From positions 416,839-480,838 of the IMG/VR virus record IMGVR_UViG_3300028558_000791: a DNA stretch of 64,000 nucleotides; one strand, written 5' to 3'. Each line of letters opens with the position of its first letter. The stretch's first letter is position 1. Below are positions 3,080-60,556 of this stretch, in pieces. The translations under genes were made by a program, and so were the position numbers. The notes below the pieces were generated by a model. It saw nothing but the letters and a program-made list of their open reading frames with translations, was not told where the DNA came from and searched no databases.

Positions 3080-3114
3080 TGGCATGAGTATTGCAAAAAG
3101 CAATCAATATGCCA
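3080..3114. promoter_or_regulatory. Double opposed sigma54-like site, copy 2
   Basis: TGGCATGAGTATTGCA-AAA-AGCAATCAATATGCCA; GG-N10-GC on both strands. Confidence 0.6.
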
Positions 3115-3183
3115 GGTGGGATAAGGTGAGAGGTCTTTGGCTCCCATTCACTGTCTGATCTTACCCAAGATCGAGGTGATTCG

Positions 3184-3558
3184 ATGAACAAGAGCCAGGT
3201 TTCCGCCATCCTCGCAAGCAATCCTCGTGCCGTCACCAAGGCCGTTGTCCTACTCTTCGGCTTGCAGACCCACCAGGAGCGTGGGACACATCGCACCATC
3301 GACGACAACGGGGTCGGGTTCAGCGCGGCCGACGCTGACTTCGGCACCTACTGCGCGATGTGGGTGCTCAACATCCACAAGACCACTCCGCCTCACATCG
3401 TGGCCGACCGACTGGCCCACTACTTGCAGGGCGACAACCACCGCAGGTATCGCACCCTGTCGGGGAAGTTCCTCCAACGTGCGCTGGAGATGACACCGCG
3501 CTACTGGCGGCAGCTCTCACATGCTGCGAAGGTGAAGGCGGAGTCGGTTCCCTTCTGA
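3184..3558 (+). CDS. Conserved phage hypothetical protein
   Basis: GAGG RBS, 11-mer upstream; QTxxE...NGVGFSxxDA pattern familiar from phage early proteins. Confidence 0.7.
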   Translation: MNKSQVSAILASNPRAVTKAVVLLFGLQTHQERGTHRTIDDNGVGFSAADADFGTYCAMWVLNIHKTTPPHIVADRLAHYLQGDNHRRYRTLSGKFLQRALEMTPRYWRQLSHAAKVKAESVPF

Positions 3559-5295: not shown

Positions 5296-5366
5296 TTCGC
5301 CTACATCGGCGAGCCCCCTGCAATCCCGATACCAACAGGTACGCAAGGGACAGGGGGCTGACTCTT

Positions 5367-5453
5367 CGCCAGTGCTACACGAAAAACGGGGCGGGACGCC
5401 TCGGCCTTCCAAGGTGGTGTAGCGTAAGGGTTCGATTCCCTGACTGGCGACCC
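5367..5453 (+). ncRNA. tRNA-like element with non-canonical core (degenerate Gly-UCC-like loop)
   Basis: CGCCAGT/ACTGGCG acceptor, AGGG-TTCGATT-CCCT T-arm, CTTCCAA loop in a mismatched stem, extra GCTACAC/GTGTAGC helix. Confidence 0.5.
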
Positions 5454-5500
5454 TGGCTCCCATTCATGAGCCAGTAGATTCCAACATCGGAGGTTCCAAC

Positions 5501-6600: not shown

Positions 6601-6795
6601 GTGGAGATGCACATGAGCAAGCAAACGTTCCGAGTGGTCGAGATGACGATTGTCCCTGGCCAGGAGCCGGCGACCAAACTCGTGCAGGGCAACCTCCCCA
6701 AGGGCAAGGCTCAGTCTCTCCAGGAGAAGCTGGAAGAGAAGCTCGGCGACTTCGACCCGCAGAAGGTGGTCTCCTACCTGGTCCAACCAGCATGA
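6601..6795 (+). CDS. Hypothetical protein
   Basis: 11-mer at 6581, GGAG RBS before the internal ATGs. Confidence 0.65.
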   Translation: MEMHMSKQTFRVVEMTIVPGQEPATKLVQGNLPKGKAQSLQEKLEEKLGDFDPQKVVSYLVQPA

Positions 6796-7378
6796 CTGTA
6801 GCACCGAACCTTGCCAGCATCCAAAGCGTAGGATGCTGGTACGAGGACCAGGAACGTACGCAACCCATGCGGTACCAGGTGTGTGTACGCCAGTTCCGTA
6901 GAGGTGAGTGGGAAGTCATGATGGGTAGCATCGTAACCTACCTGTCACCCGAAGACTACTGCGACATGCATCAGCTACTACTGGTGGAGATGTATCGTGG
7001 CACGCGCCATGCACTCTCACACGAACGCACGGAGTTGATCTAACGATCCTCCTACAAGTCAGCAGAGCTGGGGAGGATGTCATGTAACATCACACGGTTG
7101 ATGACCGTTGTTTACTTGCGCCGACAACCAGAGAGATAGTAGCGACTCCCATTCATCGACACCCTCAAACCAAAGGAATCGAGATGCTGGGTTTAGTCGG
7201 GCGGGAGTGAGTCCCGCCCATCCTTGGCTACAGTGCTGCCCACGCGACTCTATGGGCTCTAGCTGCAAGGTAATTAGGTAACGTAGTCTGCAACGTTCTC
7301 ACATAAGCGTTCCGGGTTTAGGAACCAGTGAGTCATATCCTTCTAGGATGTGGGGATACGTCAGCTACCTACCGTTGG

Positions 7379-7995: not shown

Positions 7996-8202
7996 GAGGG
8001 CCTGTAGGAATCTGGGTATACCCCCTACCCCTAAAAAAGTTTTACCTGTTTTCCCAAAAACGGTAATCGGGGTTCGGTATACGCATACCATTCCTGTAGG
8101 TTTTCATGGGTGGGGTGTCAAGCCCCCAGCAAGTCTAGCTAGGAGCCTACCTTGGTTGCCAACTAGCTAGCTCCCATTCACTGCACGTCGAGAGGTGAAA
8201 GC

Positions 8203-8457
8203 ATGGCACACTCAATCGGTCTCGGCGATATCGTCTCTCTCCAGTGGAGTGATGGGTACGACAACGGTACTGTCTGTCAGGTCCACAAGGACGGAACGGT
8301 AGACGTCTTTCGTCCCTACGTCCACAATGCTGACTTCTCATGTGCAGGTAGTCACGAGGGTTCACTGTCGGTCATCTGCTACATTGGAGTCGAGACTAGC
8401 AAGGGTATCAATCCCGAGCGTCTCAAGGTACTCCGCAAGGGCGGCACGATTCGATAG
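8203..8457 (+). CDS. Hypothetical protein
   Basis: GAGGTG RBS, 11-mer at 8171. Confidence 0.7.
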   Translation: MAHSIGLGDIVSLQWSDGYDNGTVCQVHKDGTVDVFRPYVHNADFSCAGSHEGSLSVICYIGVETSKGINPERLKVLRKGGTIR

Positions 8458-8493
8458 CCTCCCATTCACGGCGGCAGGAAAGCGACAATAGCA

Positions 8494-8695
8494 ACGGCGG
8501 GCTAGACTCTGGGTACATGGCATACTTGGTCGCTACCCAAGTAGGTCCCAACTGAGACAGTATCTTGTAGCGAGGGAATGTCTTGGGGGCCACAAGCTCC
8601 CCACATAGGGGTTCGACTCCCCACTACTATCCAAGTGGTAGGAGACCAGGTTGGCTGGGTGTGTGTTGGCATGAACCTAGAGTCTAGCCCATCGT
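8494..8695 (+). ncRNA. Long terminal-stem RNA enclosing a compact tRNA-like domain (8565-8633)
   Basis: GGGCTAGACTCT/AGAGTCTAGCCC end stem; internal GGGG-TTCGACT-CCCC T-arm, G-rich anticodon-like arm, ...TCCA. Confidence 0.55.
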
Positions 8696-8731
8696 CGGGC
8701 TCCCATTCACGGCCCATCAGCGGAGGATGAC

Positions 8732-8962
8732 ATGAGCAACAACAACGCAACGGCGCAGCAAGTCACGGCAGGCATCAGAGCAGCGGCGGCCATTGGTGAG
8801 GTAATTCGAGACTTGGGCTCTGTCCCCTCGGGGCACCTGTATGCCCGACTCATGGGACGTATGAGCCTGGACACCTACAACAGTCTCATCGGACTACTCA
8901 AGCAAGCCAATCTGGTGGAGGAGTCTAACCACCTTCTCACCTGGGTCGGCCCCAAAGAGTAA
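8732..8962 (+). CDS. Small winged-helix-like protein
   Basis: Helix-turn-helix pattern followed by LVEESNHLLTW wing; GGAGG RBS. Confidence 0.55.
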   Translation: MSNNNATAQQVTAGIRAAAAIGEVIRDLGSVPSGHLYARLMGRMSLDTYNSLIGLLKQANLVEESNHLLTWVGPKE

Positions 8963-10663: not shown

Positions 10664-10895
10664 AGGTCCCTTGCTGGAGTAGGTGTAGACCCCCCACCCC
10701 TAAAAAAGTTTTCGGTCAATTCTCAGAATCGGTAATCGGGCCTTGGAATCCACATAGTTTTTTCCAGGGTTTTTTGGCTCCCATTCACTGAGCGAATCTA
10801 GCGGCGGATCGGAAAGGGTGTATGTCGCCATGAGAACCTGGGAAGAGTACGAGGAAGAGACCAGCAAGTTTCCCTGGTGGTACACGGGGGACTAG

Positions 10896-11986: not shown

Positions 11987-12116
11987 GGTCCGAAACAAGG
12001 TAAGTGAAAGTATATAGGTAGGGTCCCTGTCACACTAGCGGTGGTGATGTCAGCCGTCCCGACCATGCGAGTAACTACCTTGTCCCCAGCGTAGGGCGCT
12101 GGGCTGATGAGCCAAC
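11987..12116 (+). ncRNA. Hammerhead ribozyme (type II-like permutation) with large insertion in stem III
   Basis: GAAA 11992-95; stem III ACAAGGTA/TACCTTGT; GUC at 12082-84; stem I CCCAGCG/CGCTGGG; CTGATGAG 12104-11; stem II is non-standard. Confidence 0.7.
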
Positions 12117-13990: not shown

Positions 13991-14350
13991 ATGTGCAATC
14001 CCGATGTGGATACTAAGGTCGAGTTGGCGAGACTGCCACAACTCCTACGGGAGAGGGGATGGTCAAGCTCAGAAGTCAAGAAGGACTATCCTGGTTCTTC
14101 TGGTCCTGGCGACTGGATCCAAGGTTCCTCGGGGCCAACCGAAACCCACCAGGGGATCACTTTCTTCTCTGGCACACCATTCCAGGTGATTGCCCGTGAG
14201 GATGACCTAAAGGTACGAGTAGGTTGGCCGGCACAAGGAACGACTACCTATACTTGCTTCTCAGCAGAGCAGGTGGAATGGTGGTTGGGTAAGATACTGG
14301 AGATGGCCGACAAGGACATTGCTGATAGACGACGGGCCTTACTAGTCTGA
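13991..14350 (+). CDS. Hypothetical protein
   Basis: AGGAG RBS, 11-mer at 13923. Confidence 0.65.
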   Translation: MCNPDVDTKVELARLPQLLRERGWSSSEVKKDYPGSSGPGDWIQGSSGPTETHQGITFFSGTPFQVIAREDDLKVRVGWPAQGTTTYTCFSAEQVEWWLGKILEMADKDIADRRRALLV

Positions 14351-14353
14351 GAT

Positions 14354-14433
14354 GTAGCTAAGAGAGCGTAGGTTCGCTCAAGGGTGTTGTAACCCTGGCC
14401 TGATCAACCGTGGTTCGAGTCCACCTAGCTACC
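14354..14433 (+). ncRNA. Cloverleaf tRNA-like RNA with 6-nt anticodon loop
   Basis: GTAGCTA/TAGCTAC acceptor; GAGCG/CGCTC D-like arm; AGGGT-GTTGTA-ACCCT; GTGG-TTCGAGT-CCAC. Confidence 0.6.
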
Positions 14434-14566
14434 CGAGCTGACTGTCACACCGAAGGATACGACCCTCTCCAAAGAACCCCCAGGGAGGCTACGGAGGATC
14501 TTTTCGTCCCTCGATGGACTAGGTGGCACATCCCCGAAGGTGGTTGGGGAAGTGTGCAACGACAGT

Positions 14567-14601
14567 CGGCTCTCTAATTGCACTCTGCAAAACAGGAGCC
14601 A
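14567..14601. promoter_or_regulatory. Double opposed sigma54-like site, copy 8
   Basis: CGGCTCTCTAATTGCA-CTC-TGCAAAACAGGAGCCA; GG-N10-GC on both strands; 11-mer 6 nt downstream. Confidence 0.55.
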
Positions 14602-30052: not shown

Positions 30053-30087
30053 AGCTACGAGTGAGATTACCTATCAATCTCGTAGCT
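30053..30087 (+). promoter_or_regulatory. Conserved leader hairpin (second copy at 32743-32772)
   Basis: AGCTAC-GAGT-GAGATT-ACCTATC-AATCTC-GTAGCT. Confidence 0.6.
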
Positions 30088-34966: not shown

Positions 34967-35683
34967 ATGGAACGCGAAAACATCATCGACAAAATCCGCA
35001 AACTCCGTGCTCTGGCAGACAACGCTGCCGCCACTGTTGACGAAGCTGCGGCTGCTGCAAGGGCAGCCGAGCTTCTCATTCAGAAACATGCCTTGCAAGA
35101 GGCTGAGTTGGGAGCTGTCTCTCAGGAAGTCTTGGAAAGTATCATCGATGATGATACTCCTCTGACCGACTGGGCCAAACGACAGAAGGTTTGGCAGAAC
35201 GTTCTTCTCCATGCAATGGCAGAGAACTACAACTGCTCCAACGTGATGAAGCGTGTTGGTGGTATCTCTAACATCTACACCATCGGCCGAGCATCTGACA
35301 TCGCTGTTCTGCGATATCAGTTCGCTTACTTCGTGGTGGAGTTGACTCGTCTGGCTCATCTCCTCGCTCCGTCTGACCTCAAGCGAGGCAGTGGTAAGAC
35401 GTGGCACAACTCGTTCTATCATGGAGCGACGGATGCCATCATCGCTTCCATGAAGTCGGCCAAGAAGGAAGTCATCAAGGACGCATCCTCAACTGCATTG
35501 GTGTTCATCAGCGAACACATGCGCAAGGTGGAGGAACTCAAAGCTCAGAAGTATCCTTGGAGTCGAACCAGTCACTCTGCACGACGGTTGGATCCCGAGG
35601 CATACGAGATGGGCAAGATGGCTGGTGCAGGGCTTCAAGCAAAGCCCGCCTTGGCTCCAGGTGTTCGCGGTCTTCTCAAGTAA
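34967..35683 (+). CDS. DUF2786-domain phage protein
   Basis: IIDKIRKLRALA...EA.AA...A..L..KH. Confidence 0.8.
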   Translation: MERENIIDKIRKLRALADNAAATVDEAAAAARAAELLIQKHALQEAELGAVSQEVLESIIDDDTPLTDWAKRQKVWQNVLLHAMAENYNCSNVMKRVGGISNIYTIGRASDIAVLRYQFAYFVVELTRLAHLLAPSDLKRGSGKTWHNSFYHGATDAIIASMKSAKKEVIKDASSTALVFISEHMRKVEELKAQKYPWSRTSHSARRLDPEAYEMGKMAGAGLQAKPALAPGVRGLLK

Positions 35684-60481: not shown

Positions 60482-60556
60482 GGCCCCATCTTCTAGCGGC
60501 TAGGATGCGAGACCTTCACTCTCGTCACACGGGTTCGAGTCCCGTTGGGGTCACCA
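60482..60556 (+). tRNA. tRNA-Glu (anticodon UUC) with encoded CCA
   Basis: GGCCCCA/TGGGGTC acceptor, CGAGA-CCTTCAC-TCTCG, ACGGG-TTCGAGT-CCCGT, ACCA; C at position 33. Confidence 0.85.

What the first reader, a model, noticed from the sequence alone, without database searches (positions are those of the whole stretch)
8494..8695. tRNA-like domain inside a long terminal stem, packaged as its own 11-mer-bounded cassette (Y-RNA-like architecture)
Seen: a 12-bp perfect end stem (8499-8510/8679-8690), extended by further pairs, encloses TACTTGG/CCAAGTA and a 69-nt cloverleaf-like part (8565-8633). That part has a T-loop TTCGACT, an anticodon-like loop CCACAAG lacking U33, and a CCA. 11-mers at 8459 and 8700 bracket it, with no ORF between. 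Established: bacterial YrlA RNAs join a Ro60-binding end stem to a tRNA-like domain and occur in some phages. Inference: a possible ligand for the TROVE-like protein, or a tRNA decoy.
Basis: partly seen in the sequence, partly recalled or inferred. Interest (0 to 1): 0.65.

Follow-up and report, generated by a model that had tools for sequence, protein, structure and literature searches.

The report
Phage RNA with permuted tRNA-like core
A giant soil phage carries a self-contained gene for a folded RNA of about 200 bases whose centre imitates the corner of a tRNA in the same rearranged order as bacterial Y RNAs; it looks like a new family of protein-binding RNA mimics, but its partner is still unknown.

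Summary
The sequence features are real. There is a 16-bp (+4) terminal stem, the UACUUGG/CCAAGUA hairpin, a canonical T-loop hairpin, and two copies of a short motif bracketing an ORF-less stretch. That motif is the gene-start signal of the whole region (55 copies, all on the + strand). The element is therefore one gene slot without a protein.

Three homologs keep the fold: L109 (84% identical) and L118 and L120 (remote, from a phage lineage with a different start motif). Between the window and L109, 13 changed pairs all stay paired (9 double changes, 0 broken).

Its 3' acceptor strand and CCA are deleted in L109, and forcing it costs 11 kcal/mol. What is kept is a four-way junction in the order closing helix, T hairpin, closed acceptor-like hairpin, D-like hairpin with a GG loop. 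This order defines bacterial YrlA Y RNAs.

However, the Rfam YrlA and tRNA models do not match, and the Ro60-contact motif (GNCGAA) is absent. The phage's true Ro60 gene lies 91 kb away, and the 715-aa protein at 30061 shows no TROVE signal.

Best reading: a cassette-borne, trans-acting tRNA-elbow mimic, a new RNA family built on a Y-RNA-like plan. Ro60 binding is possible (about 0.3) but unproven.

The parts
8459..8471 (+). upstream copy of the gene-start motif (CTCCCATTCACGG) that heads the ORF-less slot
   Evidence: There are 55 copies in the window against 1.8 expected, all on the + strand, lying 25-40 nt before start codons.
8499..8519 (+). 5' strand of the terminal stem (16 bp plus a 4-bp extension)
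   Evidence: Pair probabilities are about 1.0. Against L109 there are 3 double compensatory changes and 1 wobble change.
8523..8543 (+). hairpin H2 (7 bp); its loop holds CGCUA, which is conserved in all four homologs
   Evidence: There is 1 double and 1 single compatible change against L109, and 3 double changes between L118 and L120.
8544..8601 (+). nearly invariant core block; the fold inside it is unresolved
   Evidence: The block is 55/58 identical to L109, against 73-87% elsewhere. The string UAGCGA..GGGAA is shared with L118/L120.
8602..8606 (+). 5' strand of the closing helix of the four-way junction; pairs with 8659-8663
   Evidence: The pair A8603-U8662 becomes G-C in L109. The helix is U-A in L118 and A-U in L120.
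8607..8623 (+). T-arm-like hairpin with 7-nt loop UUCGACU
   Evidence: It is kept in all four homologs. L109 loses one G and one C together. The stems GUGGG/CCCAC (L118) and ACGGG/CCCGU (L120) covary.
8624..8641 (+). closed acceptor-like hairpin (7 bp, loop CCAA)
   Evidence: A hairpin of 3-7 bp with a different sequence sits at this place in every homolog.
8646..8658 (+). D-like hairpin (4 bp, loop GUUGG)
   Evidence: There are 2 double compensatory changes against L109. The stem is AUCC/GGAU in L118/L120. The loop always holds GG. No nucleotides separate it from the closing helix in any of the four.
8659..8663 (+). 3' strand of the closing helix
8670..8690 (+). 3' strand of the terminal stem
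8700..8712 (+). next copy of the gene-start motif, heading the 76-aa gene 8732-8962
   Evidence: In relative L108 a single motif copy joins the two flanking genes directly.

Best explanation
Window 8499-8690 (+ strand) is a stand-alone gene for a structured non-coding RNA. The RNA is about 190 nt long, or up to about 240 nt if it runs from one start motif to the next.

Shown:
- It occupies its own slot between two copies of the regional gene-start motif.
- The slot is present or absent as a unit among close relatives, and it sits beside different genes in each lineage.
- Its fold is kept by compensatory changes. The fold comprises a long terminal stem, hairpin H2 with a conserved CGCUA loop, a nearly invariant 58-nt block, and a four-way junction. 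The junction order is closing helix, T-loop hairpin, closed acceptor-like hairpin, D-like hairpin with a GG loop.

Inferred:
- The terminal stem locks both ends and stabilises the RNA.
- The junction brings the T loop and the GG loop together to imitate the tRNA elbow.
- The invariant block is a specific protein contact.
- The RNA is made with the neighbouring small early genes and acts in trans as a scaffold or decoy for a protein that reads tRNA shape.

Candidate partners, in my order of likelihood:
1. A host tRNA-handling or tRNA-targeting defence enzyme (about 0.35-0.4).
2. The phage's own Ro60 together with a host exoribonuclease, as for YrlA/Yrn1 and the phiLo Yrl RNAs (about 0.3).
For: Fold and strand:
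- The + strand folds better than the - strand and far better than shuffles. G-U pairs occur only in the + sense.
- With only the T hairpin enforced, the best fold (-95.0 against the MFE of -96.7) gives the T / closed hairpin / D-like / closing-helix junction.
- The unconstrained MFE of L109 gives the same junction, with T-pair probability 0.81 and z -5.3.

Covariation:
- Window against L109 over 59 model pairs: 42 unchanged, 4 changed on one side, 9 changed on both sides, 0 broken, 4 gapped.
- Of 30 substitutions, 22 fall in paired columns and all keep pairing. Slid-partner controls break 27-35 pairs.
- Remote homologs L118 and L120 (covariance model R2, E about 1e-5) keep every helix in the same order with further double changes.
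- A strain variant from another sample carries 4 changes. Two lie in the linker and two give G-U pairs. One of them breaks a pair of the rival MFE fold.

Autonomy of the cassette:
- The element is absent between the same two genes in L108 and in the P0003 contig.
- It lies upstream of the 84-aa gene homolog in L109.
- It lies between a 9671-like gene and an unrelated 64-aa gene in L118/L120, there bracketed by that lineage's own start motif.

Family context:
- No RNA family in Rfam matches.
- The T-AS-D order is that of YrlA (PMC4201824).
- The genome encodes Ro60.
Against: - There are no expression data; none of the public runs that hold the sequence is RNA.
- The family has only four distinct sequences from two lineages.
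- The T and acceptor-like stems shrink to 3-4 bp in L109 and L120.
- The junction linkers (1-2, 0-1, 1-4 and 0 nt) differ from those of tRNA and YrlA, so an L-shaped elbow is unproven.
- No terminator follows the element, so its 3' end must come from processing or read-through.
- The element is dispensable in close relatives.
- No partner protein is identified.
Confidence: 0.55

Rival explanations
1. It is a true Y RNA: a ligand of the phage Ro60 protein. The terminal stem binds Ro60, and the tRNA-like junction recruits a host exoribonuclease such as PNPase.
For: - A terminal stem plus the T-AS-D order is otherwise known only from YrlA/Yrn1 (PMC4201824).
- G000 encodes a Ro60 ortholog with TROVE and vWA_Ro60 domains.
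- Genomes often have several divergent Y RNAs (PMC4201824).
- Phage Ro60 with Yrl RNAs and host PNPase has been shown for Thermus phage phiLo (PMC12135203).
Against: - The YrlA covariance model gives no hit at E up to 10.
- There is no GNCGAA or CGAA motif in any of the four homologs.
- The T and D stem sequences that are near-invariant in YrlA are different here.
- The Ro60 gene is 91 kb away, whereas known Y RNAs lie within about 4 kb of it (PMC4201824).
- Other RNAs of the genome fit some Y features better.
Confidence: 0.3
2. It is the reader's version: a standard cloverleaf (8565-8633) with an anticodon-like loop and CCA. That would make it a tRNA decoy or a decaying tRNA-Cys-like gene held inside a stem.
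For: - Weak Rfam tRNA-Sec and Tymo_tRNA-like alignments of 17-18 bits.
- Relaxed ARAGORN modes call a 'Cys(aca)' tRNA at 8557-8632 or 8565-8633.
Against: - Those relaxed modes 'tRNAs' in the window, so they are noise.
- The fold is 11 kcal/mol worse than the MFE.
- The 3' acceptor strand and CCA are deleted in L109, while the junction helices covary.
- There is no similarity to the phage's own 58 tRNAs.
Confidence: 0.04
3. It is a cis-acting RNA structure of the early transcripts. It could be a leader, a stabiliser or a processing/insulator module for the gene downstream, rather than a trans-acting RNA.
For: - No terminator follows it.
- The terminal stem ends 0-9 nt before the next start motif in all four homologs.
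Against: - The downstream gene differs in each lineage: a 76-aa gene, the 84-aa gene, and an unrelated 64-aa gene.
- The same genes do without the element in close relatives.
- A 58-nt invariant block and a T-loop junction are more than a stabiliser needs.
Confidence: 0.13
4. It is a DNA-level element: the inverted repeats of a miniature transposon, a cruciform or origin, or an attachment site carrying a tRNA 3' part.
For: - There is a 16-bp inverted repeat at the ends.
- The element is present or absent as a unit.
- IMG/VR labels the record a provirus.
Against: - It is single-copy in the 481-kb genome.
- Internal helices covary with G-U pairs that work only in the + strand RNA.
- The indel is bounded by the start motif, not by target-site duplications.
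- The genome has no tyrosine integrase and no reverse transcriptase.
Confidence: 0.04

Closest known systems
YrlA / Yrn1 bacterial Y RNAs (Rfam RF02553; Chen et al. 2014, PMC4201824)
   Same: - The 5' and 3' ends pair in a long stem.
- Inside, a closing helix holds a T-arm hairpin, then a closed acceptor-like hairpin, then a D-like hairpin, with no nucleotide between the D hairpin and the closing helix.
- The T loop reads UUCGA.
- The D-like loop holds GG.
- YrlA RNAs also occur in phages that encode Ro60.
   Different: - The covariance model gives no match.
- There is no GNCGAA(N)G motif.
- The T and D stem sequences differ.
- The D loop has 4-6 nt instead of about 9, and lacks U8, A14 and A21.
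- The variable linker is 1-2 nt instead of 4.
- There are two extra domains: H2 and a 58-nt invariant block.
- The element is 91 kb from the Ro60 gene.
Thermus phage phiLo Yrl1/Yrl2 with phage Ro60 (PMC12135203)
   Same: It is a phage-encoded RNA with a 5'-3' stem, in a phage that has its own Ro60. The proposed use there is hijacking host PNPase.
   Different: The phiLo RNAs lie just upstream of the Ro60 gene and carry a CGAA motif in a large bulge. The element here does neither.
Canonical tRNA (RF00005) and phage tRNA genes
   Same: It has a T-arm hairpin with the consensus loop and a four-way junction. The genome is tRNA-rich, with 58 tRNAs and a tmRNA.
   Different: - The ends are not in the acceptor stem.
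- There is no anticodon arm.
- ARAGORN and Rfam do not call it.
Mobile promoter-bounded cassettes of T4-type phages (PeSL elements; from my own knowledge, not checked here)
   Same: Small early genes each carry a short regulatory motif. Slots are shuffled, gained and lost between relatives at those motifs.
   Different: The motif sequences and phage groups are different, and here the cargo is an RNA gene.

Membership tests
YrlA (RF02553) | Match to the family covariance model at or above 69 bits | tested here: not met
   There was no hit on the element at E up to 10, either in a 601-nt scan or in the whole genome. A remote homolog was also negative.
YrlA (RF02553) | Terminal 5'-3' stem enclosing T, closed acceptor-like (AS) and D stem-loops in that order | tested here: met
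   the order is kept in all four homologs with covariation.
YrlA (RF02553) | GNCGAA(N0-1)G motif near the 5' end (Ro60 contact) | tested here: not met
   A regex over all four homologs found no GNCGAA and no CGAA.
YrlA (RF02553) | Near-invariant T and D stem sequences, and tRNA tertiary-contact nucleotides (U8, A14, G18G19, U55C56, the 15-48 pair) | tested here: not met
   Only the T loop UUCGA and a GG in the D-like loop are present. The stems and linkers differ from the consensus.
YrlA (RF02553) | Encoded within about 4 kb of the Ro60 gene on the same strand | tested here: not met
   Ro60 is at genome 35734-37419 and the element at 425337-425528. They share a strand but are about 91 kb apart across the record ends.
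YrlA (RF02553) | Bound by Ro60 (Rsr) in vivo or in vitro | not testable with these tools
   This needs a pull-down or gel shift with the phage Ro60.
tRNA (RF00005) | Cloverleaf with a 7-bp acceptor stem formed by the two ends, and a 7-nt anticodon loop with U33 | tested here: not met
   The acceptor 3' strand is deleted in L109.
Retron msr-msd RNA | Flanking inverted repeats together with an adjacent reverse transcriptase | tested here: not met
   There is no RVT_1 match anywhere in the genome.
'Cassette B' RNA of the same phage group (model R1, built here) | Match to the covariance model built from five cassette B sequences | tested here: not met
   R1 does not hit 8494-8695. It hits window 14434-14571 and L109:1-79 instead. 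L109 carries cassette B and the element side by side.

The most novel reading that the evidence does not exclude
A new class of cassette-mobile, phage-encoded Y-RNA-like tRNA mimics. These would be early RNAs that present a permuted tRNA elbow on a long stem. They would either load the phage Ro60 and a host exonuclease, or trap a host tRNA-recognising defence or processing enzyme. They would spread between giant soil phages by recombination at gene-start motifs.
Probability: 0.3. Interest if true: 0.75.

Novelty: new variant of a known kind. Interest (0 to 1): 0.6.

Why it matters
Permuted tRNA mimicry inside a terminal stem has so far been tied to Y RNAs found next to Ro60 genes. Here the same plan appears in a different sequence family, far from Ro60. 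It sits in the early, fast-shuffling region of uncultivated giant phages, beside at least three other conserved structured RNAs.

If the RNA binds Ro60, the definition of Y RNAs widens, and gene-neighbourhood searches are shown to miss them. If it binds something else, it is a new kind of phage tRNA mimic, possibly a counter-defence RNA.

Either way it gives a compact, testable RNA: 190 nt, with clear covarying helices and an invariant 58-nt block.

Tried and rejected
Searches that found nothing useful:
- BLAST of the locus against deposited phages gave no match.
- An exact T-arm-plus-acceptor pattern in IMG/VR returned only an unrelated tRNA.
- A T-arm-plus-motif pattern returned mostly tmRNA and tRNA 3' ends.
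- A core-block pattern in IMG/VR returned nothing.
- Public runs holding the sequence are DNA only, so transcription could not be checked.

Tools or outputs not used as evidence:
- Relaxed ARAGORN modes are too noisy.
- Alignment A7 from the model search mixed in minus-strand hits and dropped L120, so it was not used.
- MAFFT alignments A2 and A5 misplace the T loop, so I aligned by hand in a script.

Homology tests that failed or stayed weak:
- Homology with the ORF-less element after the 84-aa gene in G001 (L006:3296-3450) is only borderline (score 31; 1 of 200 shuffles reach it). That element has ordinary end-to-end acceptor pairing, so I did not count it as a member.
- Homology with cassette B is borderline by local alignment and negative by covariance model.
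- There is no similarity to the phage's own tRNAs.

Readings rejected:
- Retron: no reverse transcriptase.
- Attachment site: no integrase.
- RNA-repair operon context: no RtcB.
- A GUA/GAA internal loop in the core looked like a loop-E motif, but it is not kept in L118/L120, so I dropped it.

Full report
**Setting**

The window is the last 64 kb of a 480,838-bp virus record. That record was cut from a 498-kb rhizosphere metagenome contig. It is a giant phage with 58 tRNA genes and a tmRNA.

G+C is about 42% over most of the genome. It jumps to 60% at window position ~3000 and decays to 48% by the end of the record. That high-GC part is packed with small + strand genes. Nearly all of them are preceded, 25-40 nt before the start codon, by the motif CTCCCATTCAC(G/T)G. 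The motif has 55 copies in the window against 1.8 expected, and none on the - strand.

**The observation**

The sequence features hold up.
- The 12-bp end stem is there and extends to 16 bp plus a further 4 bp.
- The + strand folds to -96.7 kcal/mol (z -5.9). That is better than the - strand (-83.4, z -4.0).
- The UACUUGG/CCAAGUA hairpin and a hairpin with the consensus T loop UUCGACU are present.
- The T-arm core GGTTCGANTCC occurs 5 times in the window against 0.14 expected. Only one of those lies in a recognised tRNA.
- The two bracketing 11-mers are simply consecutive copies of the gene-start motif with no gene between them.

**Family searches**

- ARAGORN finds only tRNA-Glu at 60482.
- Rfam at its gathering thresholds finds only that tRNA.
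- A permissive scan of 8300-8900 gives sub-threshold alignments to tRNA-Sec (18 bits) and a plant-virus tRNA-like element (16.8 bits), and nothing for Y RNAs.
- The YrlA model RF02553, searched over the whole genome, does not touch the element.

**Homologs**

The locus has no match among deposited phages. Neighbouring proteins led to related giant-phage contigs that use the same start motif.

Homologs of the upstream 84-aa gene, followed up by contig look-ups, gave the decisive material.
1. L109, a 3.3-kb contig, holds an 84%-identical copy of the element at L109:88-268.
2. A covariance model built from the two sequences (R2) finds two remote members, L118:639-830 and L120:1234-1415. Their E-value is about 1e-5. 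They come from a lineage whose gene-start motif is CCCATCGCYTCAC rather than CTCCCATTCAC.
3. A strain variant in a freshwater-sediment run covers 8500-8689 with four listed changes.

**Structure**

In the window, enforcing only the four G-C pairs of the T hairpin yields a fold 1.7 kcal/mol above the MFE. That fold has:
- a closing helix, 8602-8606/8659-8663;
- the T hairpin, 8607-8623;
- a closed 7-bp hairpin, 8624-8641;
- a 4-bp hairpin with loop GUUGG, 8646-8658.

L109's unconstrained MFE gives the same junction, with T-pair probability 0.81.

In a hand-made, structure-aware alignment of the window and L109:
- 59 model pairs give 42 unchanged, 4 changed on one side, 9 changed on both sides, none broken, and 4 gapped;
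- 22 of the 30 substitutions lie in paired columns, and every one keeps pairing;
- sliding the partners by 1-3 columns breaks 27-35 pairs.

Seven of the double changes lie outside the one hairpin whose alignment I fitted by hand. Three are in the terminal stem, one in H2, one in the closing helix, and two in the D-like hairpin.

It still has a shorter hairpin at that place.

L118 and L120 keep all helices in the same order with canonical pairs. They add double changes of their own: three in H2, two in the T stem, and one in the closing helix.

The four changes in the strain variant fall in the linker (two) or give G-U pairs (two). One of them breaks a pair of the competing MFE fold.

The many G-U pairs work only in the + strand RNA. 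The block 8544-8601 is 55/58 identical between the window and L109, against 73-87% elsewhere. Its internal fold is unresolved.

**An autonomous slot**

- In L108 (92% identity in the 84-aa protein) a single motif copy joins the 84-aa gene directly to the homolog of the 76-aa gene. The P0003 contig leaves only 33 nt between them. Relative to these, G000 has an insertion of exactly 'element plus one motif copy'.
- In L109 the element lies upstream of the 84-aa gene, next to a different RNA, cassette B.
- In L118/L120 it lies between a homolog of the 209-aa gene and an unrelated 64-aa gene, bracketed by that lineage's own motif.

Different neighbours, with presence or absence as a unit, argue for an independent gene rather than a leader of one particular mRNA.

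No intrinsic terminator or sigma-70-type promoter is seen. The terminal stem always ends 0-9 nt before the next motif. How the 3' end is made is therefore open; it could be processing at the motif or read-through.

**Comparison with Y RNAs**

Chen et al. (PMC4201824) define YrlA by four features:
- a 5'-3' stem with a GNCGAA(N)G motif;
- conserved T and D stem-loops with a closed 'acceptor' stem-loop between them;
- near-invariant T and D stems;
- location within about 4 kb of Ro60.

The Rfam consensus shows the same order, with no nucleotide between the D arm and the closing helix. The present family shares that topology exactly.

It fails every sequence-level criterion, however.
- There is no model hit.
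- There is no CGAA in any member.
- The stems are different.
- The D-like loop is short, and the 'variable' linker is only 1-2 nt.

The genome does encode a real Ro60, with TROVE and vWA_Ro60 domains, at genome 35734-37419. That lies about 91 kb from the element across the record ends.

A sub-threshold, full-length YrlA-model match (24 bits) lies 8.5 kb downstream of that gene, in the tRNA cluster. The same model also produces sub-threshold matches in 13 of 14 control genomes, so this match is weak. Phage Ro60 proteins with nearby Yrl RNAs are documented (PMC12135203), and TROVE proteins are noted in some jumbo phages (PMC7824862).

**Verdict**

The element is a real, conserved, structured RNA gene with a Y-RNA-like building plan. 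It is not a member of YrlA or of the tRNAs by any sequence-level test.

I take it to be a trans-acting tRNA-elbow mimic used as a scaffold or decoy. The partner is unknown. I put Ro60 at about 0.3 and a host tRNA-recognising enzyme or defence nuclease at about 0.35-0.4. A cis-acting role has about 0.13. DNA-level and pseudo-tRNA readings have a few per cent each.

The read-laying run stayed under 6,000 letters.

Noticed in passing
window 3141-62391 (55 sites); genome 4586-145532 (8 more): The gene-start motif CTCCCATTCAC(G/T)G lies 25-40 nt upstream of most small + strand genes. It is densest where G+C is highest. A related lineage uses CCCATCGCYTCAC in the same role. It is probably an early promoter or a processing site, and gene slots appear to be shuffled at it.
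   Followed up: partly
window ~3000 (genome ~419.9 kb) to the record end: G+C jumps abruptly from about 42% to 60%, then declines gradually to 48% and to 44% across the record ends. The first 2.7 kb of the window carry - strand genes. IMG/VR calls the record a provirus, yet no tyrosine integrase is found.
   Followed up: partly
genome 35734-37419 (L004:7735-9420), outside the window: A true Ro60 ortholog (TROVE 37 bits, vWA_Ro60 52 bits). It sits beside a nucleoside deoxyribosyltransferase-like/NUDIX protein, dCMP deaminase, microbial PARG and a GIY-YIG protein.
   Followed up: yes
genome 45921-46030 (L101:1501-1610): A full-length but sub-threshold match to the YrlA model (24.2 bits). It has a T arm, a 7-bp hairpin closed by GAAA, and a D arm, and it lies in the tRNA cluster 8.5 kb downstream of Ro60 on the same strand. 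The model also gives sub-threshold matches in most control genomes.
   Followed up: partly
window 5297-5455; L094:1321-1500; L097:~3090-3262; L098:~6690-6862: A second conserved ORF-less RNA follows a 62-aa gene. It is a long hairpin followed by a tRNA-like unit with ordinary ends (7-bp acceptor CGCCAGU/ACUGGCG), a T arm, and covarying inner helices but no anticodon arm.
   Followed up: partly
window 8000-8125 and 10676-10756; L095:576-720; L093:1143-1248; L094:4301-4410; L108:295-387: A third conserved ORF-less sequence ('cassette A', about 125 nt). It is present twice in the window, and one copy lies just upstream of the 84-aa gene.
   Followed up: no
L093:1246-1412, L095:769-955, L096:813-994, L097:7292-7509, L098:9215-9420, L109:1-79; window 14434-14571: 'Cassette B' is an RNA of 155-210 nt with a covarying terminal stem of about 21 bp and a conserved CCGAAGG just inside it. 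That is a looser fit to the Y-RNA CGAA motif than anything in the studied element. The window copy (19 bits, E 0.009) follows a tRNA-like unit at 14353-14434 with a perfect 7-bp acceptor and an irregular anticodon loop.
   Followed up: partly
genome 50073-50149, 172924-172997, 173183-173255: ARAGORN calls tRNAs with anticodons UUA and CUA (two copies), which would read stop codons. I did not test whether the phage recodes stops. All translations here used table 11.
   Followed up: no
Its function remains open.
   Followed up: partly
L093:2056-2123; L119:279-336; L097:~14272-14341; L099:~12024-12097: Relatives carry further tRNA or tRNA-like units inside ORF-less slots of the early region. One is above the Rfam tRNA threshold (34 bits). 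The others are minimal acceptor-plus-T-arm forms.
   Followed up: no
window 35559-35569 (- strand): Another exact T-arm core (GGTTCGACTCC), on the minus strand. I did not examine it.
   Followed up: no
window 8500-8689: A 194-nt contig from a freshwater-sediment metagenome matches almost exactly the stem-bounded element, at about 96% identity. A second rhizosphere sample holds an identical copy. The phage, or at least this RNA, therefore occurs in several habitats.
   Followed up: partly
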